A stretch of 64,000 bases of DNA from Octopus sinensis (Eukaryota): the NCBI RefSeq assembly GCF_006345805.1, contig NC_043010.1:52638001-52702000 (forward strand), in the 5' to 3' direction. The position numbers were made by a program, and so were the translations under genes. Below are positions 9,955 to 60,712 of this stretch, in pieces. Within the stretch, counting starts at the first letter, position 1. Every line of letters begins with the position of its first letter. The notes under the pieces are model-generated. The model had not been told where the DNA came from. It worked only from the letters and a program-made list of their open reading frames with translations, and did not search any database.

Positions 9955-9958
9955 TAAC

Positions 9959-10002
<44 letters not shown>

Positions 10003-10056
10003 AATCAATGATAATAATAATAATAATAATAATAAATAATGATAATAATAATAATG

Positions 10057-10090
<34 letters not shown>

Positions 10091-10115
10091 TAATAATAAT
10101 AATAATAATAATAAC

Positions 10116-10147
<32 letters not shown>
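9955..10147. repeat. Long (AAT)n microsatellite. The window also has many (TA)n, (CA)n, (TATC)n, (TATG)n and (GA)n tracts
   Basis: Directly visible. These tracts give rise to the IY/CV/TH/LS-rich ORFs in the track. Confidence 0.95.
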
Positions 10148-10149
<2 letters not shown>

Positions 10150-10704
10150 GCCCCGATGCAGTACCTGGCAGTGGCTTTCATGGCTTCTGATCTTAACTGA
10201 TTGGAAGTGTTATCATGTACCTTGTTTTGTCTTGGTATAAAAGATGGTCTACAGCAAATATTCTGCTTAAAACCACAGATTTGCTTGTCAGTTGTTTGAC
10301 CGTAACCAGCTGAGCATGTCCCTTAGTGGCTGATGATATGTGCATCTCTGATCACGAACAGAAGTAGTGGGGGAGCATCATAGCCATCTGTTGAGAGGGA
10401 TTCTTTGGGGTTTGAATAATTCACCTCTGGAAACATGGGTGTTTTGTTCAACAACCTTAAACAAACCTTATTCAGGGACCTTTTGAGTGGGATGAGTTAC
10501 TCGACCTGAAGAAGATTCCAAGTGGGCCCCACCTGCAAGGTCATGTGCTGTTTATCTTGATATGAGATCACCGTGTCGCACACATATGGTTGTGATGTAT
10601 GTGCCTAGTGTACCCTTATCAGATGGGTAGTCATGATGGGTATACTGGGCTTCGTATATTTGTACCCCAGTGTTGCTTTGATGGCATGCACTGCTCTCTC
10701 ACTC

Positions 10705-10705
<1 letters not shown>
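10148..10705 (+). mobile_element. About 560-bp non-coding interspersed element ('family F'), flanked by (AAT)n
   Basis: Five copies in the window: 10148-10705, 14503-14718 (partial), 15569-16098, 16125-16629 and 41901-42238 (minus, partial). Confidence 0.8.
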
Positions 10706-10749
<44 letters not shown>

Positions 10750-10966
10750 CTTTCTACTATAGGCACAAGACCTGAAATCTGGGAGGGGGAGGGTCGATTA
10801 CACTGACCCTAGTACTCAGCTGGTACTTAATTTATCGACTCCAAAAGGATGAAAGGCGAAATTGATTTCGGTGGAATTTGAACTCAGAACGTAGCTGCAG
10901 ATGAATTACCACTAAGCATTTTGCCTAGCGTGCTAACGATTCTGCCAGCTCGCCACCTTACTAATA

Positions 10967-11003
<37 letters not shown>

Positions 11004-11215
11004 CTTTCTACTATAGGCACAAGACCTGAAATCTGGGAGGGGGAGGGTCGATTACACTGACCCTAGTACTCAGCTGGTACTTAATTTATCGACTCCAAAA
11101 GGATGAAAGGCGAAATTGATTTCGGTGGAATTTGAACTCAGAACGTAGCTGCAGATGAATTACCACTAAGCATTTTGCCTAGCGTGCTAACGATTCTGCC
11201 AGCTCGCCACCTTAC
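10750..11215. repeat. Exact tandem duplication (period 254 bp) of a SINE-B copy plus (AAT)n
   Basis: 10750-10961 and 11004-11215 read identical. Confidence 0.92.
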
Positions 11216-11220
11216 TAATA

Positions 11221-11255
<35 letters not shown>

Positions 11256-12064
11256 AACGACAATAATAATAATGTTTAAAAATTGAATAACATACACACA
11301 CACACACACATATATATGCATGTGTATTTGGATATATATATATATATATATATATACATACATACATACAATTTTTAAGAGGTAAATTGTAATGAAGACA
11401 TCAAGCGAATAAAGGATTCAATATCTTCAGTAGAGTGAATTATTTACTTGTTCACAGATGACAATGAACTTTGCTGTTTTGCCTACAATGGTTTTATCAA
11501 CCTGTTGAGGTGTTGTAAGGGGTGACAAAAAAAATAAGGCTGACATCATGAAGAGCACACAGCCCTAAAACATTGCCTTTAACAAAAGCCTGTCCAAGCC
11601 AAACCAAAAGGGAAAGGAAGATGTTAAAGTGATGATGATGATGATGATGATGATGATGGTGATGGTGATGATGATGATGATGGTTATGGCTTATAATCAA
11701 CTCCTACTGAGCAGTTTCAGAAGTGATCCTAGCCAAAACATCAAAGTGACTGTCACCTTTAAGCAAGTAAGCATGTGTATGGCTTAGTGGTTGAGCGTTG
11801 CACTAATGGTTGCAAGATCATGGCTTTGATTCCCAGACTTGGTGCTGTGTTGTGTTCTTGAGCAAAGCACTTCGTTTCACGTTGCTCTCAATTATTTCTT
11901 CACCTGAAATGTGGCACACAGTGCACCTGCACAGGTAATGTTGATTTGATGCAGGGAGTGAGCTTATTTGTACACAAACATTTGATCACTATGAAGAAAT
12001 TAGCTGTGTGGTTGTTTGGCAAGAAATTGCCAAACCCTCATATGTCATCTAACAATGGGAGAGT

Positions 12065-16740: not shown

Positions 16741-16778
<38 letters not shown>

Positions 16779-16924
16779 TATAGTAATAATAATAATCAGT
16801 GAATTTGGGCGTGTAATCTGGGAATGCATACAATGCCCTTCTCTGCCCTAGGTGTATGGAAAACACTCGGCGAGAAACGGAAGAAAATTTGAAGAAAGAA
16901 GGAAAAAACATAATAATAATAATG

Positions 16925-16966
<42 letters not shown>

Positions 16967-28658: not shown

Positions 28659-28763
28659 TTAAGGGTCATATGGACCCCAGTTGAGACCCTCTACACTAGG
28701 CTATGTGCCGGCACTAATTATCACAACAAGATGTGGAAAAAAAAAAGAACAATAGAAACTTAC

Positions 28764-29216
28764 CCATTGACACAGACTGTTTTCTCCAAGGCAGGAACAT
28801 TTACTGGTGATACAGGCAAGCCATTGTAATCTCCTTTTGATGATGATGATGATGATGATATAGCAGTGTTCAAAGGTGGCGATGAAAGTGAGGCAGGTAT
28901 GGATGTGACAACTGAAAGTGCTGATGGGGAAGAGGAAACCATAAGGTCATCAGGCTGCTGCTGCTGATGATGGTGTGTTTGATGAGAAGATAAGGTCCCT
29001 GTATCAGGCTGAGACACCTGGTGTACAGTGTGTTGGGGTTGCTGCTGCTGCTGCTGCTGATGTTGTTGCTGTTGTTGTTGATGATGTGGTGATTGTTGTT
29101 GTTGATGTTGATGTGGGGGTGGTGGCGGTGGTGGAGGTGGTTGTTGCTGATGCTGTTGTTGTTGTTGTTGATGGTGGTGGTTTTGGTGTGGGTGCTGTTG
29201 TTGTTGGAGTTGTTGT

Positions 29217-29248
<32 letters not shown>

Positions 29249-30051
29249 TTGTTGCTGCTGTTGCTGCATGACGTTGACGTTTGCTGTTTCCATGAGACCA
29301 GTACCTGCACCACCACCGCCGCCGACACCACCAGCAGCACCACCACCACCACCACTGCCACTGCCACCACCACCACCACCACCACCACCACTGGCAGCGG
29401 CGGCGGCAGCAGCAGCAGCAGCAGTGGCGGCAGCAATAGCAATTGCACAATTGCCGGGGCTGCTGCTGTTAGTACTGCCGTTGCTGGTGTTGTTGCGGCT
29501 CGTCAGTGGCATGTTGCCGCCTGGTAGCGACGTCGTGGTCGTGATGCTGGCAATGGTCGTGGTGGCCGTCGTCGTCAGTCCTGCAGGGACATTCACCGAC
29601 GTCGAAGCTGGTACCCCGCCCACTGATGCGCCAGGCATTGGTTTCATGGTGAGGTCCAGCCCGGAGCCGTTTGTCACACAGTTCACTGTATTAGTCGTGG
29701 AAGCGGTTGTGGAAGCAGCAGCTGCTGCAGCTGCCGCCGCCGCTGCTTTTGTGGAGAGGTTAAGGGCAACAGGGACTTGAGGATCATATCGATACTGCGG
29801 TTTGTAGTTTGGCCGTTTGCTCAAGATGTTTGGTCGATCAATGCTTGAGTCTTTCGGTTTGGGAGCAATGGGTTTGCCGGGATAGAGTTTTGATTGATAT
29901 GTTTGGAATTCAGTGGGTGGCCGGTTGTATTTCTCGAGTTCTTTGGCTAGATTGGTGCGTGGTGTAGAGGTGGACACATATGGAGGATATTCATAGCAAG
30001 GGAGATCAAGCTGTTTAGTCAATATCATTGGTCGAAGTACACGGTCGGAAC
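28764..30051 (-). CDS. Myt1: Myt1-family exon (1288 nt): MYT1 domain motifs (SDRVLRPMILTKQL, TPRTNLAKELEKY) followed by poly-A/T/G/Q/H/P tracts
   Basis: cttttcag|GT TCC GAC CGT ... AAT GG|gtaagt. Phase 1-2, within ORF 28760-30271. The motifs match the vertebrate MYT1L SDRVLRPM / PRxNLAKELEKY region. Confidence 0.92.
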
Positions 30052-31014
30052 CTGAAAAGAGAAACAGGTGAGGAACTGTTATGGAGTGCAGTGGAAATAT
30101 ATGGAAGTGAAAGTAAGAGAGAGTTAGAGAAAGGAAGTATGAGTGTATAATAAGAGGGAGAGAAAAAGAGAATGTTTTAAAAGATGAAGATAGTTTGTGA
30201 GTGTGTCTGTGTGTGTGTGTGTGAGAGAGAGAGAAAGAGAAGGAGAGAGAAAGAGGAGAGAAAGAAAGCATGAGTGTATAGAATGAGGGAGAGAGAAAGA
30301 GAGAGTTTTAAAAGATGAAGGTTATAGCTAGATAGCTAGATTGATAGAGGGAGAGAAAGAGAGATTGGTAGATAGATAGAAAGATAAGCAGAAAGATACA
30401 TAAATAGAGAGACAGAGAGAGGTGGGGGGGGACAAAGAGTGAAAGAGGGTGGTAAAAGCAGAGTTTAAAAGTGTGTGCTAGATACGAATAAAAAAAAAAT
30501 GTAATTAGGAGAGAGGGAAAGAGAGAGAAAGAGAAAGAGAAATTTTGCATAAACAATGAAGACAATATGAAGAAAGAGAGAGAGAGAGAGCATGAGACAA
30601 TAAGAGCATGGAAATAAAGTTTTTTGTGCATTAAAATATGTAGTTGTGGAGAAATACTTATGATGACAAGTGTTTTGATCTGAAACTAGGGCTTGCACAA
30701 CTAAAATGATCCCAGTGTGGAAGACACAAGTCAACCATTCAGAAACACACAAAAACCATTAGCTTCAATTAAACGTTCATTCTTTGTTATATGGTGTTAA
30801 AACCTAAGATGGCAAACTGGCCGAATCGTTAGCACACCAGGCAAAATGCTTAGCGGCATTTTGTCCATCCTTATGTTTCTGAGTTCAAATTCCACTGAGG
30901 TTAACTTTGCCTTTCACCCTTTTTTTTTTTTGGGTGGGGGTGATAAAATAAATACCTGGGGACGATATAATCGACTTGTTCGAAAATAATTGTCCAGAAA
31001 CAAAAAATTATTCC

Positions 31015-41762: not shown

Positions 41763-41805
41763 AAAAGAATTAAAGGTTGTGTTAATGCTACTTTGTAATA
41801 ATCCC

Positions 41806-41866
<61 letters not shown>

Positions 41867-42252
41867 GTTATAATTATCATCATCATCATTATTACTATTA
41901 TTGAGTGAAAGAGCAGTGCATGCCATCTAAGTGACACTGGGGTAAAATATACGAAGCCCAGTATACCCATCATGACTACCTGTCTGATAGGGGTACACCA
42001 GGTACATGCATCACAACCATATGTGCGTGACATAGGAATCTCATATCAAGATAAACAGCACAAGACCTTGCAGGTGGGGCCCAGTTAGAATTTTCTTCTG
42101 GTCGAGTAACCCATTCCGCTCAAACGGTCCCTGAATAAGGATTGTTTAAGGATGTTGAACGAACCACCCATGTTTCCAAATGTGAATTATCCAAACCTCC
42201 AAGAATTCCTTTCAACACATGGCTATGATGCTCCCCCATTATTACTATTATT

Positions 42253-42293
<41 letters not shown>

Positions 42294-44159
42294 CATTATT
42301 ATCATCATCATCATCATTATGGATATATATATATATATATATATATATAGTGCCGGTGGCATGTATAAAAGCACCATCTGATCGTGGCCGTTTGCCAGCC
42401 TCACCTGGCCCCCGTGCTGGTAGCATGTAAAAAGCACCATCCGATCATGGCCGTTTGCAAGCCCCGTCTGGCAACTGTGCTGGTAGCACGTAAAAAGCAC
42501 CCACTACACTTACGGAGTGGTTGGCATTAGGAAGGGCATCCAGCCGTAGAAACATTGCCAGATCAGACTGGGCCTGGTGCAGCCTTCTGGCTTCCCAGAC
42601 TCCAGTTGAACTGTCCAACCCATGCTAGCTTGGAAAGCGGACGCTAAATGATAATGATGATGATGATATATATGTATATTTATATGTACACACACACACA
42701 CGCACACGCACACTCACATGCATACACACAGTTTTGCAATGATGTGTCTCAGAGTTTGGCTTTACTCCGTGATGCTATGTACACAAATAGTTTGCTGTAG
42801 CCTTGTAGCAGCCAAATCCTTGTGGATGAAACTGGAAACATGTCAAATACATAAATAAATATTTATATCTACACATACACACACACATTTCTCTCTCTCT
42901 CTCTCTAAATATATATTCATATATAAAATATAAGTGAATATTTATATGCATTCATGTATTATTGGAAAACCTTTATAATTGGCTGAAGAGCACTCAACAT
43001 CTTAAATCTGCTGTAATACTTACAACTTTTAATAAAATGTTGTAGTGTGAAACAATTGTACCAAATTACCGGAGTCATTCTTGTTGCTTATTTTTGATTA
43101 TAATCACCCCGCAAATTTTTATGGATAACACCATACAAAATTCTGGTGCATCTAAATTAAGTACCATATTCATTTGAATCTAAATTGTTGCATTCATACT
43201 TATATGTACTTACATATAGAAAACAGTTACAGACATGCACAAATATATAATATCATAATTCATTACACACATGCATATTTTTAAACACATGCAAACACCA
43301 GTACAATGTGATGTAGAACAACTAAGACACAGCTAAGCATAGAGATTGTTAGCAAAATTTGGACAACATAACGTGCAGGAGTGGCTGTGTGGTAAGTAGC
43401 TTGCTAACCAACCACATGGTTCTGGGTTCAGTCCCACTGTGTGGCATCTCGGGCAAGCGTCTTCTGCTATAGCCCCGGGCCGACCAATGCCTTGTGAGTG
43501 GATTTGGTAGACGGAAACTGAAAGAAGCCTGTTGTATATATGTATATATATGTGTATGTGTGTGTATGTGTTTGTGTGTCTGTGTTTGTCCCCCCCTAGC
43601 ATTGTTTGACAACCGATGCTGGTGTGTTTATGTCCCCTGTCACTTAGTAGTTCGGCAAAATGGACCGATAGAATAAGTACTGGGCTTACAAAGAATAAGT
43701 CCCGGGGTCGAGTTGCTCGACTAAAGGCGGTGCTCCAGCATGGCCACAGTCAAATGACTGAAACAAGTAAAAGAGAGAAAGAGATAACATTTAATTAGAT
43801 AATGGATAGGAAGGTTTCTGGCCCAAAAGCAGCTATTAGCAGGCTCTAGTATATCAAGTAGAGTTGTATTATGGTTTTTATAATTTTTTTTTATACCCAA
43901 ACTGAAATTTTTGTATACCTTCTCCTCAACTTCTCACCTATGCGACTTATGACTGCAAAAAGTCGAACGCTTTGCAAAGGTTGAACATATCATTCAAGAT
44001 CCTCTGCATTGTTATCAAAAGATATATGATGGGAAAAAGAAATGAAAACTATTCCAACAGAGCTCATTATACAGTTCTGTATTTAAGAGTTGAAGAATTA
44101 TGTACATTATTTAAATTATTTACATTTGATGGATATTTGTCCACATCTTGTTTGTTATT

Positions 44160-44205
44160 AACACAACATTTCGGCTGATGTATCCTCCAGCCTTCATCAG
44201 GTGTC
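44160..44205 (-). ncRNA. Minimal hammerhead ribozyme, nearly intact, sense to the Myt1 pre-mRNA
   Basis: Minus strand gacac-CTGATGA-a-ggctg(gaggatacat)cagcc-GAAA-TGT-T-gtgtt. Stem I gacac/gtgtt, 5-bp stem II, stem III AATGTT (one transition from the palindrome AACGTT), GUU triplet. Confidence 0.68.
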
Positions 44206-45316
44206 TTGGGGAAATTTCAAACCTGGGTTCTCATTCCTAAGGTATTTTTCAATGCTATTATCATTATTACTATTATTATTGTTCAGTTCATTGCTTGGAA
44301 TCTTGGTGTTAGTAGCCCGTGCTCTTAATCACTATGCCATATGCCCATGGGCATATGGCATAGTGGTTAAGAGTGCTGGCTACTGTATGGTTTGGATGAA
44401 GTTAGTTCTGGTAGATTTGAAATGGCCGGATGCCCTTCTTGTATCATGTTTGCTCAAGGTCAATTTATATCAGGGTTAAGGTAAAATATTGTTGTTAGTA
44501 TTGGATATCATGGCTAACAGAGAAACAGAGGATATCACATTTGAAGCACAGTTATCAAAGCCTGGCGAGATGCTGTGTTAAATATTATGTAAAGACTGTG
44601 TGAGATGTAACGTAAAAAAAAAAGGAGTGGGGGAACCATAGATATATCAATATATCTATGTTTGGTCAGGATATCTAGCTTAGCATAAAAAATCAAATAA
44701 GAAATATTTATATTTCAGGCAGCAAAGTTATCATGCACAGACAGACAAAGAGAGAGAGAGAAAGAGAAAGAAATGTTGAAAAAATAAAAATGAAATAAAG
44801 AAAGAAACAGCAGAGTTAAGATAAGATATTGAACAAAGATTAAGTATTTCAAGAAGACAAGATGTCAAAATTTTAAAGATAAAATTTGCAACGTCAAGAT
44901 AAGATGGCAGGATTATGACAAGACATTCAGGATGAGATGACATACTGTGCTAAAAGAAGGCAGAAAAATACGAAGGGATATCTTACAATAAAATTAAAAA
45001 AGTAATGTAAAAAAAATGTAACCACGACAAAACATGATATCAAAACATGACAGCGGAAACTAAAACGTGATATACAGTTGAGTCTAAAAATGGTTAAGAC
45101 AGAAATTGTAAAGCTAAGAAAACAGGGTATGTTTAAAAATACAATGTGTATAGGCTCAGACATGGTTTTGTGGTTCAGAAGCTTACTTTTGTGAACATGT
45201 GATTTTGGGCTCAGTCTTACTGAGTGGTACCTTGGGCAAGTGTCTTCTACTATAGCCCTGGGTTGACCAATACCATATGAATGAATATGGTAAATGAAGA
45301 CTGTGTGGGAGCCTGT

Positions 45317-45379
<63 letters not shown>

Positions 45380-45383
45380 ATAT

Positions 45384-45695
45384 GTTGAGACCCCCTTTGG
45401 TCATGATTGCACCTAGAAAGTTACCCTCCCAAGCACAAGTCCAAGTCCAGGCAAGGTTGTTTATGGAAGACCAGCAGTCCCCTCTCCACACCACCAGTGT
45501 TATCCAAGGGAAAGGCAACGGCCGATACTGCTTGGCACCTGTGATGTCGCAACTCATTTCTACAGCTGAGTGAACTGGAGCAACGTGAAATAAAGTGTCT
45601 TGCTCAGGAACACAACACACAGCCCGGTCCGGGATTTGAACTCACAACCTCACGATTGTAAGCTCAACGCTCTAACCACTGAGCCATGCGCCTTC
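45384..45695 (-). mobile_element. tRNA-derived SINE with an RTE-like 3' tail
   Basis: Minus strand tggctcagtggttagagcg ... gagttcaaatccc head, CORE-like middle. Confidence 0.75.
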
Positions 45696-48503: not shown

Positions 48504-48611
48504 CCGACTTGACCTCTTGTGCAGCCAATCGGAGCAGGTCAGTCTCAGTGCAGGCAGCAAGCACGGCCTTAGAAGGGTCATCATACTTTGGAATGAGCAC
48601 AAGGTGAAGGC
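48504..48611 (-). CDS. Myt1: Myt1-family exon (GLHLVLIPKYDDPSKAVLAACTETDLLRLAAQEVKS)
   Basis: ttggcaattag|GC CTT CAC ... TCG G|gtctgt. 108 nt, phase 1-1, stop-free. Resembles the invertebrate Myt1 segment before the SDRVLRPM motif (from memory). The donor is weak, and a second GT lies 4 nt downstream. Confidence 0.78.
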
Positions 48612-49228
48612 CTAATTGCCAAAAACAAAAAACGATAAAACAAAGAAAAACAACAAAAAACAAAACCAAAACAACAACAGCAACTACAGCAACAAAAAAA
48701 TATATAAAAAAATAAAGATGATCATAAAACTAACAAACTGTATTTAGGTGTTATTGTTGTTGAGGCTGTTTAGCTTCATATCAGTCCAGATGGCGCAGGC
48801 AGATCAAAAGCAATCTAACTATGACCATCACATCAGAATTTTGCATACCTAGGACTACATTAACTAATGTGTTTTCTTTCTCAAGATCATCTGCATGTGA
48901 TTTGAGGGAATATGTTTGCTAAGTGGAAGAAAGGGTAACAATGTTCTTTGTCTATCTCCTTAACTTCTTGGTGATTTTAGGCAAAATTATACTGTCTCCA
49001 TCTGTTTTAATTAAATTAAATTCTTTGTGCAGCTGAGGATTGCTCTGCATTTAAATTGATGTAATGGTTGCATTGTTCAATTAAATGGAGTTGCGTGAAG
49101 CGATCGTACTGCATTACCTCTGGATATCCTTGTTGCTTATTTTGATTTTAATCATTTTATTTTGAAATTGTATGGATAATACCGTACTAAATTCTAGTGC
49201 CTCAACCTAAGTACCTAATTCATCTGAA

Positions 49229-54576: not shown

Positions 54577-54945
54577 TTACATGTTTTAGTTCTTAGGCTG
54601 CGGCCATGCTGGGGCACCGCCTTGAAGAATTTATATCACAGCCAAATCTATCGACCCGAGTACATATTTTTTTAAAGCCTTGTACTTATTCTATTGGTCT
54701 CTTCTGCTGAACTGCTAAGTTACAGGGATGCAAACACACCAACACCAGTTGTTAAGTGGTGATGGAGAGACTAACACAGATACAAAGACACACACACACA
54801 CACATACAATGGGCTTCTTTCAGTTTCCACCTACCAAATCCACTCACAAGGTTTTGGTTGGCCTGAAGTCATAGTGGACGACACCTGCTCAAGATACCGC
54901 ACAGTGGGACTGAACCCAGAACCAGGTGGTTGGGAAGCAACCTAC
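54577..54945 (-). mobile_element. SINE family A copy filling most of the 633-nt intron between the giant exon and the ZF2 exon
   Basis: Reverse-complement similarity to 51023-51430. Confidence 0.8.
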
Positions 54946-55044
54946 ATGTGGCATGAGACCAACATGTGGCATAGTATGGTCCATTATAGAACAACAACAG
55001 CAAGACTATGATATCAATAAACAAACGAGGCATTCTATTCTTAC

Positions 55045-58000
55045 CTTTCATGACACCTGACCCGATGTCGTGTGTTCCACTTGTAGTGACAGAGGGCTCA
55101 TCTGGCAGTCTCTTGGTGTTGGCGATGTCGAGGTTGCTGTTGTTGTTGCTGTCAGTGACAACATTAATTAGTTCTTGGCCGCCGTCATCGCTGTATACAT
55201 CGTAGTCACTGCTCACTCTGACTCCGACTGCTGAATTAACAGGAGCTTGCACCAGGGTGCTTATCACTGAGCTGTTGCCCATCGTCGCATGGGCTGTGGT
55301 GGTGGCTACCACTCCTGCCGCCGCCGTCGTCGTCATGGTCACCGACGAAGACGGTGGGGTCGCACCGGTAACCGAGGGGGAGGAACAAGGAGAGGAACAT
55401 GACGATACTGAGGGTGGGGCAACAGGAGTAGTGTTGCTGCCAGCGGTAGCCCAATCGGTGACCACCATGTAATCGGGGTCGCCACCCATGCCTGCTTGTT
55501 GCTGCTGCTGGTGCTGCTGCTGCTGGTGGTGAAGCCCTACACCCACAACGCCATCCATGGCCATCCCTGCTGACCCCATCTGCATTTCCATCACTTCGCT
55601 GCTGCTGTTGTTGTTGCTATTGTTATTGTTGTTGGCGGTGGTATTGGAGAGGTTGTGTGTTGCGGAAGCTAGTGAAGCTGATGGTGAAGACGACATCGTC
55701 ATCATCGCAGCGGCGGCGGCTGCAGCAGCAGCAGCAGCTGCTGCAGCCGCACTGCTGCTGTTGCTGCTAGCGCTGTTACTGGTGTTATTGTTATTGCTGT
55801 TGTTGTTGTTGTTCGTGTTGGTCAGGCCTCGCCGCCGTTGCGGTGAGAGTGATGGATGCTGGTGCTGTTGTTGTTGTTGTTGATGGTGGTGGTGATGATG
55901 ATGACGATTATTATTGTTGTTGTTGTTACTGCTACCAGTGTTGCTATAGTGTTGGTGGGGATGAGGATGTGGCTGGAGGTGTGTGTGCGGGGAAAGGCTG
56001 CCTGTCGTCGAGCACATCATATCGACGGTGGTGGTCGAGACGATGCCACTGTTCGCCACAGCGGCACTGCCGCCGCCGCCACCACCACCACCACCAACAC
56101 CACCACCAACACCACCACCTCCACCACCACCTCCACCGCCACCACCACCACCACCACCACCACCACTGCTGGAGGCGGCGTTCGGGCTGAGCGTTGCTGC
56201 TGGCAACGGAGAGTGGTGGTGCTGCTGTTGCTGCTGTTGATGATGATGGTGATGATGATGGTGGTGATGATGGGACGGCGGCGGCGACCGGACGTTGACA
56301 GGGGATGGCAAACCGATGACTCCTCCGGCCACCGTCGATGGACTCGACGTTGAGGAAGACGTCGTTGTCGCTGCCGTCGTAGCCATGAGACTGTCCTCCG
56401 TGTAGATGCAGTCGCTTGGCATGGCACCAGCCGCTAGGGTGGTGGTCGTAATCCTGCTGTTGTTGTTGCTGTTGTTATTGTTGTTGATGTTGTGGTGGTG
56501 ATGGTGTTGGTGGTTGTGTTGTTGGAGTTGATGATGTTGCTGTTGTTGATGATGATGATGTTGCTGCTGCTGTTGTTGGTGGTGATGCTGCTGGTGGTGT
56601 TGGTGTTGTTGCTCTTGGTGGTGTGGGTGATGGTGAGCAGAGGCATGGAGGTGCTGTTGCTGCTGCTGATGATGATGAGGATGCGGGTGGTGGAGATGCT
56701 CCACGGGTGACACCACTGGTGGCTTCTCCTTTGTGGCAACCGGAGCATATGCCTTCCCATCATGCCCCAGTCCTAATCCCATTTGCACTCGCTGTGAGCC
56801 ACTTTCAACATTATCTCCCCCATCGCCTTCATCTTCCTCTTCTTCCTCATCTTCTTCTTCCTCTTCATCTTCCTCCATCTCCTCTTCATCCGCCCCTCTC
56901 AGAACACAACACTCATCTTCCTCCTCTTCCTCTTCGCCTTCCTCCTCTTCCTCTTCTTCTTCTTCCTCCTCCTCCTCTTCTTCTTCCACTTCTCCAGCCA
57001 TTTCCAACTCTTCCAGGTCTTCTATTTCCTCTTCTTCCTCCTCTTCTTCTTCCTCTTCGTCTTCCTCCTCCTCTTCGTCTTCTTCCTCTCCTTCAACCGA
57101 CTCTGGAATGTCCATGATTTCATCATGTTCTTCGTCGACTTCTGCTCCTGTCCCTGCCTCTGCCTCCACTTCAGCCTCTGCTTCTGCCTCGCTGTTGCAC
57201 TCACTTTCTGCTGAGCAACAGGAGGTCGCTCCAGACTGGATACTCGCACACTGCTGCTCGATCTTCAGCAGGATTTCAGCGTCATCGTCGGATGACACCA
57301 CACCCACCTGGCTCTGAGGATACTTTCCTGAACTTGAAACTGAGCCCGAGGATTCATCGCCATTCCCATTGTTTGCAGCAGTGCTACCACCTCCACCCGT
57401 GCTGCCTTGCGATGACTGGGTCTCATCCCGGTACGATGACGATAGCGTTTCAGCGTCACCGCCTCCTCCATCGCCAACATCATTGGAGACGCCGCCACCA
57501 CCGTCTTTCTTTGCAGGTATGGCCGTTGATGATGACGACGAAGAGGAGGAAGAATGAGGGAAGGCGCTGGATGAGCCAGAAGATGAAGCAGCAGGTTGGC
57601 GGCGAGAAACTTCCCGTGTGGTGACAGAACTGGTACGTGAAGTTGCTCCACCGCTTCGTGTGTTACTTGACCCTGAGCGGCCTCCTCCCACTTTTCCTCT
57701 CCGACTTCCTGCTCCTCCTCTCTTGTTTCCGCTGCTACTGCCGACACCTTCACCCGTCTCTCCTTCTTCTTCTACATCCTCCTCCTGCTGTCGCCTTCTG
57801 CCAACCGTACCTTCCTCGGAAGCAGCAACCTCTTCATCTTCCTCATCCTCTTCGTCCTCCTCTTCCATCTCGTCAGCTTCCTCCTCTCCCATTTCTTCTC
57901 CTTCCTTCTTCTTTCTTTTCTTCTTTTTTTTCTTCTTCTTCCTTCTCGGTCCCGTCCCACCCACAGCACTGCTCTCCCGGCTGCTGGCATGGTTGCTGTT

Positions 58001-59198
58001 GTCATCGTCACTCGTGGTTCCACGACGCTGGGCTGCTGACTTTCTCCTCGTCGAATAGTAGTAGCTCTCCTCTGCCGTTTCATCATACTCCCCCGACAAA
58101 CTGCGCAGCGCTCGCTCAGCCTCTTGGAAGCACTTCTGTTCGTCATCAATCTCCGCCGTGGCTGTCGATGCTCCACTAACTTGACCGCCACTGCTGCCAC
58201 CACCAACAACACCACCACCACCACTACCACTGCCACTACTGCTGCTGTTGCTGCACGATAACAGCTTCGTAGACACGGCCAGAGTAGCCGCGGTCACTGC
58301 GGAAACTGCAGTGGAAGTCACCTCTGAAGAAGCAGCAGTGGAAACGTTCACATCGAGACCAAGACCTAGGCCTAGTTGAAGTCCAAGACCAAACCCTAAC
58401 CCGAGGGGCGTTTTATCATTGCTGCAGCTGGCCTCGGTGTTTGTAGTGCTAGTAGCAGAAGTAGAAATGGAAGTGGTGGCAGGAGCCGTTGTTGCTGTCG
58501 ATGCGGCCGTTGCATTTCCTTTGGTGTCTTCGGTGCTTTCGCTCGTAGTGGGTGTTCCCTTACTGTGACTGTCTTTGAGAGAACTAGCGACGCTCGCTTT
58601 CGAAGAAGTCGAACTCGATGCCGATGTAGACGTAGACGACGCAGAAGATGTCGAAAGAGCCGAGAGAGGTTTTTCCTTTGAGCGGCCACTACCACTACTA
58701 CTTCCGCCACTGCCACCACCACCACCACCACTACCGCTGCCACCACTACCACTTGCAGTGTGTTTCCCCTTGTTCTTTTCCTTTCCTTGGGAAGCAGCCT
58801 CTCCCTCCGGTACAGCTGCTTCGGCTTTCTTCCTTTCCACCTCTCCTCTCCCTCTACCTCTTTCTTCTTCTTCTTCTTCTTCTTCTTCGGCTTCTTCTTC
58901 CTCCTCTTCCTCTTCCACTCCTTCTTCGTCTTCCTCCTCGTCCTCGTCGTCGTCCTCTTCACTCGTCCGTGATGTGCTGCTTCTCCCTGCTGCTGCCGAT
59001 GTCGTGGTAGTAGTTGTTTTTGTTGCTGTTGTTGTTGCTGTTGCTGCTGCTGCTGTTGTAGCTGTCGCTGTTGCTGATGTCTGCTGCCGTTTACGACTCC
59101 GCTTTACGGAATGATGAGCGGCTTCTTCCTCCTCTTCTTCTTCTTCTTTCTCAAGTTTTCGCTTTTTTGCTGCTGCAGCGATTGGACATGCTTGAACA
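55045..59198 (-). CDS. Myt1: Myt1-family giant exon (4154 nt): end of ZF1, KKRK motif, acidic tracts and poly-E/S/T/G/A/Q/H/N low-complexity region
   Basis: Acceptor actttttcag|T GTT CAA GCA TGT CCA and donor ATG AAA G|gtaaga. Lies in the stop-free frame of ORF 54869-59440. Phases match both neighbouring exons (2 in, 1 out). Confidence 0.9.
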
Positions 59199-59229
59199 CT
59201 GAAAAAGTGCAAAAGAAAAAGGATAATAA

Positions 59230-59303
<74 letters not shown>

Positions 59304-60712
59304 CATACATACATACACATATACAATATAATAATATAAATAGGAAATAAATAAAATAAAAAGAAAGGCAAAGTTGACATTGGTAGAATTTGAACTAAGA
59401 ACATAAAGATGGAGGGAATACCTATTTCTTTACTACCCACAAGGGGCTAAACACAGAGAGGGCAAACAAGGACAAACAAACGGATTAAGTTGATTATATC
59501 AACCCCAGTGCACAACTGGTACTTATTTAATCGACCCTGAAAGGATGAAAGGCAAACTCGACCTCGGCAGAGTTTGAACTCAGAACGTAGCGGCAGACGA
59601 AATACCTATTTCTTTACTACCCACAAGGGGCTAAACACAGAGAGGACAAACAAGGACAGACAAACGGATTAAGTCGATTATATCAACTCCAGTGCGTAAC
59701 TGGTACTTATTTGATCGACCCCTGAAAGAATGAAAGGCAAAGTCGACCTCGGTGGAATTTGAACTCAGAACGTAGCGGCAGATGAAATACTGCTAAGCAT
59801 TTCGCCCGGCGTGCTAACGTTTCTGCCAGCTCACTGCCATATGGATAAGATTTTCTCACATGTCGTTGCATACAAAATTTGCTAAACCTTCATATTCTTG
59901 CCTTTCTTTATTGCTAAGAAAGTTGCTAAGTTGTTGTTCAGCATATCCACATCTCTATCTCCTTACTCACTTTGTCCTACATTATGAATAGGGCTTTTAT
60001 TGTTTATGACAAACCCATGAGATATAGTTTATGCTTCTTCCAGCTTGTAAAGCCAAACCAATTTCATATCCCTGGCATAGAGGGTAAGATCAAATACAAC
60101 AAGGCATTTTTTTATATCTAATCCCCTAATGTCGCTACCAATCAGTGCCATCTTAAGGCACGGGCACACTGAACAGTTGCTTGGGGCGCTTGTGGATCTA
60201 GGGGTCCGATTCTGATTTATGTATGCTGTGGCTTGCTGGCAGTAAATATATACATTATAGGGACCAATGCATTTAGTTGCCCAAGGCCCTAAAATGCTAC
60301 TAAGACCCTCCTGCCAATTCTCCATTTTGTGCATAATAACTCTCTTTACTCTTTTACTTGTTTCAGTCGTTTGACTGTGGCCATGCTGGAGCACTGCCTT
60401 TATAGTCGAGCAAAAGACCCCAGAGCTTATTCTTTGTAAGGCTAGTACTTATTCTATCGGTCTCTTTTGGCGAACCACTAGGTTACGGGGGCGTAAACAC
60501 ACCAGCATCAGTTGTCAAGCGATGCTGCAGGGACAAACAGACACACAAACATATACACACACACATATACATATATTCTACATCAAGTGAAAGTCGGGAT
60601 GGACGCTTCGTTTTTGTGTTGGTGCCCCACTCTGTCATACGCGACTATGAGGATTTGCATCCCCAACGTAAAACTTATAATGTAATACATGTCCTTGAAG
60701 TAGTAATTGTAC

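What the first reader, a model, noticed from the sequence alone, without database searches (positions are those of the whole stretch)
44160..44205. Near-intact hammerhead ribozyme in sense within a Myt1 intron
All core nucleotides are present (CUGAUGA, GAAA, GUU), with 5-bp stems I and II, an extra A after the core, and a loopless stem III (AAUGUU) that can pair only with a second copy. Penelope-associated minimal hammerheads with such palindromic stems are known to cleave as dimers. Predicted cut is between 44165 and 44164. If active, it would cleave the nascent transcript of a neuronal TF in an 18-kb intron. It might also need a partner RNA from another copy, which would couple cleavage to the expression of related repeats (inference).
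Basis: partly seen in the sequence, partly recalled or inferred. Interest (0 to 1): 0.8.

Follow-up and report, generated by a model that had tools for sequence, protein, structure and literature searches.

The report
Decayed Penelope hammerhead copy in intron
The hammerhead-like motif is real, but it is one slightly decayed copy among more than a thousand of the minimal hammerhead carried at the end of an octopus Penelope-like retrotransposon. It sits alone in a Myt1-family intron and very probably does nothing to the host transcript.

Summary
The motif is on the minus strand at 44205..44160 exactly as described. It has the CUGAUGA core, an extra A, a 5-bp helix II, GAAA, a loopless helix III, U17, and a 5-bp helix I. 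The predicted cut is at 44165|44164.

It lies in sense in an ~18-kb intron of a MYT1-family gene. A structured descriptor found no match in 48 Mb of simulated sequence, so it is not a chance match.

It is not a gene-specific element. It sits in a ~280-bp solo terminal unit (44348..44070) of an endonuclease-positive Penelope-like element (PLE). At least 1088 anchored copies exist in this genome, which is probably Octopus sinensis.

The architecture matches the published PLE "min-HHR". PLE relatives from a beetle and from a metagenome contig carry the same motif after the ORF, with compensatory changes in helix II. The ribozyme is therefore real at the family level.

This copy has lost the conserved C15.2 through CpG decay. 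Its 4-nt dimerisation palindrome is now AUGU (+2.6 kcal/mol, against -1.7 for ACGU). There is no second copy in 64 kb. Published min-HHRs are inactive as monomers and weak even as dimers.

Verdict: a new member of a known kind. Cleavage of the Myt1 transcript is unsupported and unlikely.

The parts
44160..44205 (-). Minimal type-I hammerhead motif (min-HHR). It comprises helix I, the CUGAUGA core, an extra A, helix II with a 10-nt loop, GAAA, loopless 15.2/16.2, U16.1, U17 and the helix I 3' strand. The predicted cut is between 44165 and 44164.
   Evidence: Sequence read. It is the only descriptor match in the window. It aligns in register with family copies and with foreign PLE motifs.
44167..44168 (-). 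Positions 15.2/16.2. This copy has U.G, where the family majority and both foreign relatives have C-G, a CpG.
   Evidence: at position 15.2, C in 38, T in 28 and a gap in 3 of 69 copies. CG in L107 and L109; duplex energy -1.7 (ACGU) against +2.6 kcal/mol (AUGU).
44070..44348 (-). Solo, non-autonomous terminal unit of a Penelope-like element. It has a tRNA-like head (44348-44284), an AAT-rich microsatellite (44283-44256), and a tail carrying the hammerhead (44255-44070). The last 33 nt (44102-44070) are the optional 3' extension.
   Evidence: BLAST against genomic copies. The same head and tail follow the PLE ORF in 6 of 6 loci. No PLE ORF is present in the window.
44349..44384 (+). Inverted 36-bp stub of the unit's 5' end. 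With 44316-44348 it forms a 33-bp hairpin-capable inverted repeat.
   Evidence: 89% over 38 nt on the opposite strand. Inverted partners abut the 5' end in 11 of 20 randomly sampled copies.
48508..48612 (-). Upstream flanking exon of the MYT1-family host gene.
   Evidence: tblastn of a zf-C2HC-bearing homologue, residues 476-510 of P0008.
29747..30061 (-). Downstream flanking exon, encoding the MYT1 domain, within open frame 28760-30307.
   Evidence: Pfam PF08474, 28.5 bits against a cut-off of 27. tblastn hits from P0001-P0008.

Best explanation
The site is a passenger copy of the minimal hammerhead ribozyme that belongs to the 3'-terminal (pLTR-like) module of an endonuclease-positive Penelope-like retrotransposon. 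In the element, the motif most likely helps process multimeric or tandem PLE transcripts. Two motifs pair their 4-nt A-C-G-U segments to build a shared helix III, and each core then cuts after U17. That step is inferred from the literature and not shown here. The window holds a solo ~280-bp unit with a 36-bp inverted 5' stub, inserted in sense in an ~18-kb intron of a MYT1-family gene. It has decayed neutrally since insertion, and C15.2 has become U by CpG deamination. It has no partner nearby and a destabilised palindrome, so it is expected to be catalytically silent and to have no effect on the host transcript.
For: Repeat membership: 93-96% identical copies genome-wide, and 1088 copies with both flanking anchors exact against 0 for the reversed-pattern control. 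PLE identity: the head-plus-tail unit starts ~35 nt after the stop of an ORF in 6 of 6 loci and in 3 of 20 random copies. The ORF has a YVDD reverse transcriptase (RVT_1). Its homologues carry PF00078 and PF26215. Its C-terminus aligns with a PF01541-positive GIY-YIG PLE family at hhalign probability 99.8%, E=1.6e-27. PLE-style insertion anatomy: inverted partners in 11 of 20 copies, an optional 33-nt 3' extension, and one direct tandem with a 221-bp period. These match the description in PMC8557442. Family-level ribozyme: the motif shows the published min-HHR signatures (PMC4209133). It aligns in register with motifs 83-87 nt after the ORF in PLE relatives from Leptinotarsa and from a JGI metagenome contig. 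On that alignment 95.5% of cells are paired, against 24-56% when the partners are slid, and 4 pairs change on both sides. Neutral decay of the dispersed copies: non-CpG core sites vary as much as stem sites (0.039 against 0.043), and CpG sites vary at 0.28. This copy: single in the window, and helix III at +2.6 kcal/mol.
Against: No activity data exist for this family or this copy. All invariant core nucleotides and helices I and II are intact in the window copy, and the monomer minimum-free-energy fold keeps both helices. Weak cleavage with an abundant trans partner therefore cannot be excluded by sequence alone: pairing with an intact ACGU copy gives about +0.1 kcal/mol. The cross-species covariation rests on only three lineages, and the beetle copy has a C at core position 4.
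Confidence: 0.85

Rival explanations
1. The intronic copy is an active ribozyme that cleaves nascent Myt1 pre-mRNA by dimerising with RNA from another copy of the repeat. That would couple expression of the transcription factor to expression of the repeat.
For: The core and helices I and II are intact and in sense orientation. The genome holds more than a thousand potential partner copies, and about 13% of a sample of 70 are fully intact. Dimeric action of PLE hammerheads is documented (PMC4209133, PMC6765202).
Against: There is no partner in cis within 64 kb. The intermolecular helix III would be 4 bp, at +2.6 kcal/mol as a homodimer or +0.1 with an intact partner. Published min-HHRs gave no monomer cleavage and only low cleavage as tandem dimers or trimers (PMC4209133). 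Copies decay at the neutral rate, with no sign of constraint. Nothing distinguishes this copy from the other >1000.
Confidence: 0.03
2. The motif is a conserved structural element of the PLE 3' region but not a working ribozyme in this clade. It might, for example, serve as a recognition or priming structure for the reverse transcriptase. Its hammerhead core would then be retained for reasons other than cleavage.
For: The in vitro activity of metazoan min-HHRs is very low (PMC4209133). PLE clades without canonical hammerheads proliferate well (PMC8557442). Even the ancestral helix III of this family is marginal, at -1.7 kcal/mol.
Against: Every catalytic core position is kept in octopus and in the metagenome relative, together with covarying helices and the conserved 15.2/16.2 CG. 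That pattern is the one expected for catalysis. The only common core polymorphism among octopus copies is at N7, the one core position that tolerates any base.
Confidence: 0.1
3. The motif is a chance resemblance amplified by a repeat and has no hammerhead ancestry.
For: About one full descriptor match is expected by chance somewhere in a 2.7-Gb genome. This extrapolates from the core-only rate of 6.5 per Mb. The Rfam models do not score it.
Against: It lies in the terminal module of a PLE, the location where such motifs are known. It shows the extra nucleotide after A9, the G10.1-C11.1 pair and the CG at 15.2/16.2. It is alignable with motifs at the same place in PLE relatives from other phyla, with compensatory changes.
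Confidence: 0.02

Closest known systems
Minimal hammerheads (min-HHR) of metazoan Penelope-like elements (Cervera and de la Pena 2014, PMC4209133; Lunse et al. 2017, as cited in PMC6765202)
   Same: Both have type-I topology with an open 4-5-bp helix I and an unpaired nucleotide between A9 and G10.1. Both have a G10.1-C11.1 pair and lack a helix III hairpin, with palindromic 15.2/16.2 so that two copies form helix III. Both are located in the PLE terminal repeat, mostly occur as dispersed single motifs, and sometimes occur as pairs on opposite strands.
   Different: Helix II is 5 bp (6 with a G.U) with a 10-nt loop, shorter than the 7-8 bp reported for Schistosoma. The terminal unit also carries a tRNA-like segment and a microsatellite between the ORF and the motif. 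This particular copy has U.G at 15.2/16.2.
Schistosoma Sm-alpha / Sj-alpha SINE-like elements with hammerheads
   Same: Both are short, very abundant, non-autonomous retroposon units that combine a tRNA-like 5' part with a hammerhead.
   Different: The Schistosoma motif is a canonical, efficient type-I hammerhead with a helix III hairpin and loop-loop contacts. Here the motif is minimal, and the tRNA-like nature of the head is not confirmed by ARAGORN defaults or by Rfam.
Metazoan non-LTR retrozymes (PMC7229834; bioRxiv 10.64898/2026.07.22.740005)
   Same: Both are non-autonomous units related to PLE terminal repeats and carry a hammerhead. One locus here shows a direct tandem with a 221-bp period (L003/L004).
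   Different: Retrozymes are defined by tandem arrays with canonical hammerheads and circular RNA products. Most copies here are solo or inverted pairs, and the motif is minimal. Circular RNAs were not examined.
Conserved intronic ribozymes of amniotes (hammerheads HH9/HH10; CPEB3 HDV-like ribozyme)
   Same: Both are self-cleaving motifs lying in sense within an intron of a host gene.
   Different: The amniote ribozymes are single-copy, structurally complete, active as monomers and conserved across species. This is my own knowledge of those families and was not tested here. The site here is a recent repeat copy that lacks a helix III.

Membership tests
PLE minimal hammerhead (min-HHR) | Conserved catalytic core: CUGANGA, GAAA, U16.1, H17 | tested here: met
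   all positions are present in the window copy.
PLE minimal hammerhead (min-HHR) | Unpaired nucleotide between A9 and 10.1, and a G10.1-C11.1 pair | tested here: met
   A at 44193; G at 44192 pairs with C at 44173. The foreign relatives have an extra C and G-C or G.U.
PLE minimal hammerhead (min-HHR) | No or minimal helix III, with complementary (palindromic) 15.2/16.2 | tested here: inconclusive
   The family majority and the relatives have C-G. The window copy has a U.G wobble, which still pairs, but the 4-bp dimer helix is predicted unstable.
PLE minimal hammerhead (min-HHR) | Location in the terminal repeat of an RT plus GIY-YIG Penelope-like element | tested here: met
   This holds at the family level; the window copy itself is a solo unit without an ORF.
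PLE minimal hammerhead (min-HHR) | Helices supported by covariation among related elements | tested here: met
   95.5% of cells are paired and 4 pairs change on both sides, with slide controls at 24-56%. Only three lineages were available.
PLE minimal hammerhead (min-HHR) | Mg2+-dependent self-cleavage as a dimer | not testable with these tools
   This needs in vitro transcription of tandem constructs.
Rfam Hammerhead_1 (RF00163) | Score at or above the gathering threshold of 34 bits | tested here: not met
   There is no hit at gathering score or at E<=10 for the window site, nor in the L098 locus that holds an intact copy. Other PLE hammerhead families in the same genome do pass.
Non-LTR retrozyme | Tandem arrays of units, each with a canonical type-I hammerhead, yielding circular RNA | tested here: not met
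   The window copy is solo. One tandem pair was found among about 50 loci. The motif is minimal. Circular RNA is not testable here.
tRNA-derived SINE | Recognisable tRNA-derived head with A and B boxes | tested here: inconclusive
   ARAGORN defaults and Rfam find no tRNA. Only at an 80% threshold does ARAGORN call a 65-nt tRNA-like fold; three of its six calls (L087, L093, L095) fall on the sense strand at comparable offsets. The resemblance to box A and box B is by eye.
tRNA-derived SINE | Discrete unit with a fixed 5' end, independent of the autonomous element | tested here: met
   of 48 head-containing copies, 37 begin within about 25 nt of the head start, 11 continue into the ORF, and none ends in the 100 nt between.

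The most novel reading that the evidence does not exclude
The solitary intronic copy could still cleave Myt1-family pre-mRNA at 44165|44164, by forming a transient heterodimer with abundant RNA from intact copies of the same Penelope-derived unit, perhaps helped by an RNA chaperone. Output of a neuronal transcription factor would then depend on expression of the repeat in octopus neurons.
Probability: 0.02. Interest if true: 0.75.

Novelty: new member of a known kind. Interest (0 to 1): 0.18.

Why it matters
As it stands the finding matters little. It adds an octopus family to the known minimal hammerheads of Penelope-like elements. It also illustrates how a motif that looks like a gene-specific ribozyme can be one of more than a thousand decaying repeat copies.

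Two side results may be useful to transposon and ribozyme specialists. First, the same min-HHR is alignable across PLE relatives from an octopus, a beetle and an unidentified eukaryote, with compensatory changes. Second, in the octopus it is packaged in a discrete, SINE-like ~280-bp unit with a tRNA-like head. That packaging may link part of the large octopus SINE load to PLE machinery.

If the intronic copy were shown to cut the Myt1 transcript, it would be a rare case of repeat-dependent ribozyme control of a host gene. The evidence points the other way.

Tried and rejected
- Rfam cmscan of the whole window at gathering thresholds, and of 43600-44800 at E<=10, gave no hammerhead. It also gave none in the L098 locus that holds an intact family copy. 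I rejected this as evidence against the motif, because the models require a helix III hairpin.
- RF00163 run on the whole genome found other PLE hammerhead families with an 8-nt palindrome, not this one.
- I looked for the autonomous partner among the 30 best GIY-YIG loci. They belong to a different, Neptune-like PLE family with no similarity to the tail. The partner was instead found from ORF remnants upstream of random copies.
- Pfam did not recognise the C-terminal endonuclease directly. A profile-profile comparison settled it.
- tRNA detection in the head failed with ARAGORN defaults and with Rfam. Only relaxed thresholds gave hits.
- Three closer PLE homologues lie on ENA contigs whose DNA could not be served.
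- The energy of the full hammerhead dimer could not be evaluated, because it is a pseudoknot in concatenated notation. I used the energies of the isolated helix III duplexes instead.
- Lunse et al. 2017 is not held in the library and is cited through the review PMC6765202.
- No clear target-site duplication was seen by eye at the window insertion.

Full report
**Observation**

The minus strand from 44205 to 44160 reads GACAC-CUGAUGA-A-GGCUG-(10-nt loop)-CAGCC-GAAA-UG-UU^GUGUU. This is a type-I hammerhead layout.
- Helix I is 5 bp (four Watson-Crick pairs and one G.U).
- The full CUGANGA and GAAA core boxes are present.
- One unpaired A lies between A9 and G10.1.
- Helix II is 5 bp and opens with G10.1-C11.1.
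- Positions 15.2 and 16.2 are directly adjacent, so no intramolecular helix III can form.

One correction is needed. The segment that can pair with a second copy is the 4-nt A15.1-U15.2-G16.2-U16.1, not the 6-nt AAUGUU. A14 and U17 must remain unpaired in the catalytic fold.

**Chance**

A loose pattern (CTGATGA, a gap, GAAA, a gap, GT) is expected 0.73 times per window. I also wrote a full descriptor requiring the core, an optional extra nucleotide, helices I and II of at least 5 bp, paired 15.2/16.2 and UH. It matched only this site in the window. It matched nothing in 48 Mb of first-order Markov sequence, even with 4-bp helices. Core-only matches occurred at 6.5 per Mb.

Extrapolation gives about one chance hit per 2.7-Gb genome, so the context decides.

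Rfam reports no hammerhead here at gathering score or at E<=10. It also misses an intact copy of the family (L098). That reflects the missing helix III hairpin and not absence of the motif.

**What the sequence belongs to**

The 141 nt around the motif have 93-96% identical copies on all large contigs. A pattern made of two flanking anchors (24 specified bases) with a free 49-53-nt interior matched 1088 times. The reversed control matched 0 times.

Alignment of copies with their flanks shows a unit made of four parts:
- a ~75-nt tRNA-like head;
- a variable AAT-type microsatellite;
- a ~150-nt tail that carries the motif;
- an optional 33-nt 3' extension.

In 3 of 20 copies taken in genome order, the head is preceded by the end of an open reading frame. 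I searched the genome with that 160-residue C-terminus. It returned 150 scored matches at 77-100% identity to the query, out of 4693 first-look candidates. In 6 of 6 fetched loci the head starts ~35 nt after the stop codon and the motif-bearing tail follows.

The ORF has the features of a Penelope-like element:
- It contains a YVDD reverse transcriptase, with an RVT_1 match. The RT blocks are visible.
- Database homologues carry PF00078 plus PF26215.
- A profile of it aligns from the RT thumb through the C-terminal endonuclease with a second octopus family that scores on Pfam GIY-YIG. The hhalign probability is 99.8% and E=1.6e-27.

The element is therefore a canonical endonuclease-positive Penelope-like element (PLE), and the repeat unit is its 3'-terminal, pLTR-like module.

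The way copies sit in the genome fits PLE behaviour as described in PMC8557442:
- An inverted, usually 5'-truncated partner abuts the 5' end in 11 of 20 random copies.
- A 30-40-nt extension is present at one end only in some copies.
- Occasional direct tandems occur (221-bp period in L003/L004).

One homologue is named by NCBI as an Octopus sinensis protein. It lies on a contig of exactly the length of G000:C1. The window is therefore most probably from that species.

**The copy in the window and its host gene**

The unit runs from 44348 down to 70 on the minus strand, that is 44348..44070, and includes the 33-nt extension. A 36-bp inverted stub of its own 5' end lies at 44349-44384, which creates a 33-bp hairpin-capable repeat.

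There is no PLE coding sequence in the window. There is no other copy of the tail and no other descriptor match.

On the same strand lie exons of a MYT1-family gene:
- zf-C2HC motifs at about 62.3 kb, 13.0 kb and 3.3 kb;
- a MYT1 domain in the frame 28760-30307 (PF08474);
- further exon matches at 58.1, 54.4, 53.0 and 48.5-48.6 kb.

The motif therefore lies in sense in the intron between 48508 and about 30.1-30.3 kb.

**Is the family's motif a real hammerhead?**

It has the features that Cervera and de la Pena (PMC4209133) list as emerging signatures of PLE "min-HHRs":
- a G10.1-C11.1 pair;
- palindromic 15.2/16.2 without loop 3;
- a short open helix I;
- location in the PLE terminal repeat;
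- pairs of motifs on opposite strands a few hundred bp apart.

I fetched three more distant PLE homologues (42-44% protein identity). The Leptinotarsa copy (L107) and a JGI metagenome contig (L109) carry a motif of the same architecture 87 and 83 nt after the stop codon. These align in register with the octopus motif, including GAAACGU and part of loop 2.

On that alignment 95.5% of cells in helices I and II are paired, against 24-56% when the partners are slid. Four pairs change on both sides, three of them in helix II.

With only three lineages this is modest, and the beetle copy has C at core position 4. It still agrees with the literature and argues against a chance motif.

Among 69 octopus copies the commonest core variation outside the two CpG dinucleotides (C11.1-G12 and C15.2-G16.2) is T or A at N7, the one core position that tolerates any base. 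Non-CpG core sites otherwise vary as much as stems (0.039 against 0.043 per site), and CpG sites vary at 0.28. Dispersed copies are therefore decaying neutrally.

**State and likely activity of this copy**

Core positions and helices I and II are intact, and the predicted monomer fold keeps both helices. Position 15.2 is U. The family majority is C (38 of 69 copies), as are both foreign relatives. The site is a CpG, with TG and CA decay products in many copies.

Only 9 of 70 sampled copies keep the core, the helices and the CG. The window copy belongs to the largest decayed class, with 19 copies. That sample is biased towards relatives of the window copy.

Nearest-neighbour energies for the isolated intermolecular helix III are as follows:

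| Duplex | Energy (kcal/mol) |
|---|---|
| ACGU with ACGU (ancestral) | -1.7 |
| Window AUGU with an intact ACGU partner | +0.1 |
| AUGU with AUGU (window homodimer) | +2.6 |
| 8-nt palindrome of another PLE hammerhead family in this genome | -10.3 |

In the published tests a single min-HHR showed no detectable cleavage. Dimeric and trimeric constructs cleaved only weakly (PMC4209133; summarised in PMC6765202). A recent preprint found that only one of nine PLE-related Xenopus retrozyme dimers cleaved in vitro (10.64898/2026.07.22.740005).

This copy is solitary, has a weakened palindrome and belongs to an intrinsically slow class of ribozyme. Cleavage of the host pre-mRNA is therefore very unlikely. 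That last step is inference and has not been measured.

**Comparison and novelty**

The site works like, and passes most membership tests for, the PLE minimal hammerhead. It fails the Rfam Hammerhead_1 threshold and is not a retrozyme in the strict sense.

Its packaging recalls the Schistosoma Sm-alpha SINE. It is a discrete unit whose 5' ends cluster at the head start: 37 of 48 head-containing copies begin there, 11 continue into the ORF, and none ends in the 100 nt between.

The tRNA nature of the head is not confirmed, however.

I found no paper that describes hammerheads in octopus PLEs or SINEs. The giant-squid genome paper lists 235 Hammerhead_1 hits (PMC6962438).

This is a new member of a known kind.

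**Age (rough inference)**

The window copy is 96% identical to its nearest relatives. It differs from the family majority at 4 of 62 positions around the motif, two of them shared subfamily variants. Using the calibration quoted for O. vulgaris, a Jukes-Cantor distance of 0.065 for about 18 million years (PMC13282606), the insertion is of the order of 10-20 million years old. That can be tested by looking at the orthologous intron in other octopus species.

Noticed in passing
window 44316-44381: There is a near-perfect 33-bp inverted repeat with no loop, made of the PLE unit's head and its inverted stub. In the sense pre-mRNA it would form a long hairpin about 110 nt upstream of the hammerhead motif. 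It scores on microRNA models (mir-7563, 39 bits) but far below their gathering scores. Many other loci carry the same head-to-head junction.
   Followed up: partly
window 44284-44348 (-); L082, L087, L093, L095 heads; L108:2600-2700: The PLE 3' region contains a tRNA-like segment, with stretches that look like box A and box B, right after the ORF. The short units start at its 5' end, like a Pol III SINE. ARAGORN defaults and Rfam find no tRNA, and only relaxed ARAGORN does. By eye, a PLE homologue on a Logan contig (L108) also has a tRNA-like stretch after its ORF. Part of the large octopus SINE load may be PLE-dependent.
   Followed up: partly
G000-wide; L031-L050: A different, RF00163-detectable PLE hammerhead family is present in the genome. 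It has a GUAC helix I and an 8-nt helix III palindrome, ACACGUGU, which has decayed to ACAUGUGU in most copies. There are 65 scored hits, including a tandem pair 431 bp apart (L036/L037).
   Followed up: partly
L051-L080 (e.g. L057, L058, L072): There is a second abundant PLE family with a Cys-rich linker before a GIY-YIG domain, which looks Neptune-like. It gave 4846 first-look candidates and open frames of up to 883 aa. It is unrelated in DNA sequence to the unit studied here.
   Followed up: partly
window 54869-59446 (-): A 1525-codon open frame lies on the gene strand, with only low-complexity Pfam hits. One short stretch (58138-58082) matches a zf-C2HC-bearing homologue. It is probably a very large, low-complexity exon of the MYT1-family gene.
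   Followed up: partly
window 43366-43801 and 45144-45386: Other interspersed repeats flank the PLE unit. Copies of the first recur near many of the fetched loci at 75-89% identity. They were not classified.
   Followed up: no
window 9956-11256, 16743-16966, 41805-41869, 42245-42293: The window contains AAT/ATT microsatellite arrays of the same type as the microsatellite inside the PLE unit. PLE units often begin or are truncated in such repeats.
   Followed up: no
ENA contig of P0009: Two identical 449-aa PLE ORFs lie head-to-head about 240 bp apart on one contig of another assembly. This is the same inverted arrangement seen for the short units here. The DNA could not be fetched.
   Followed up: no
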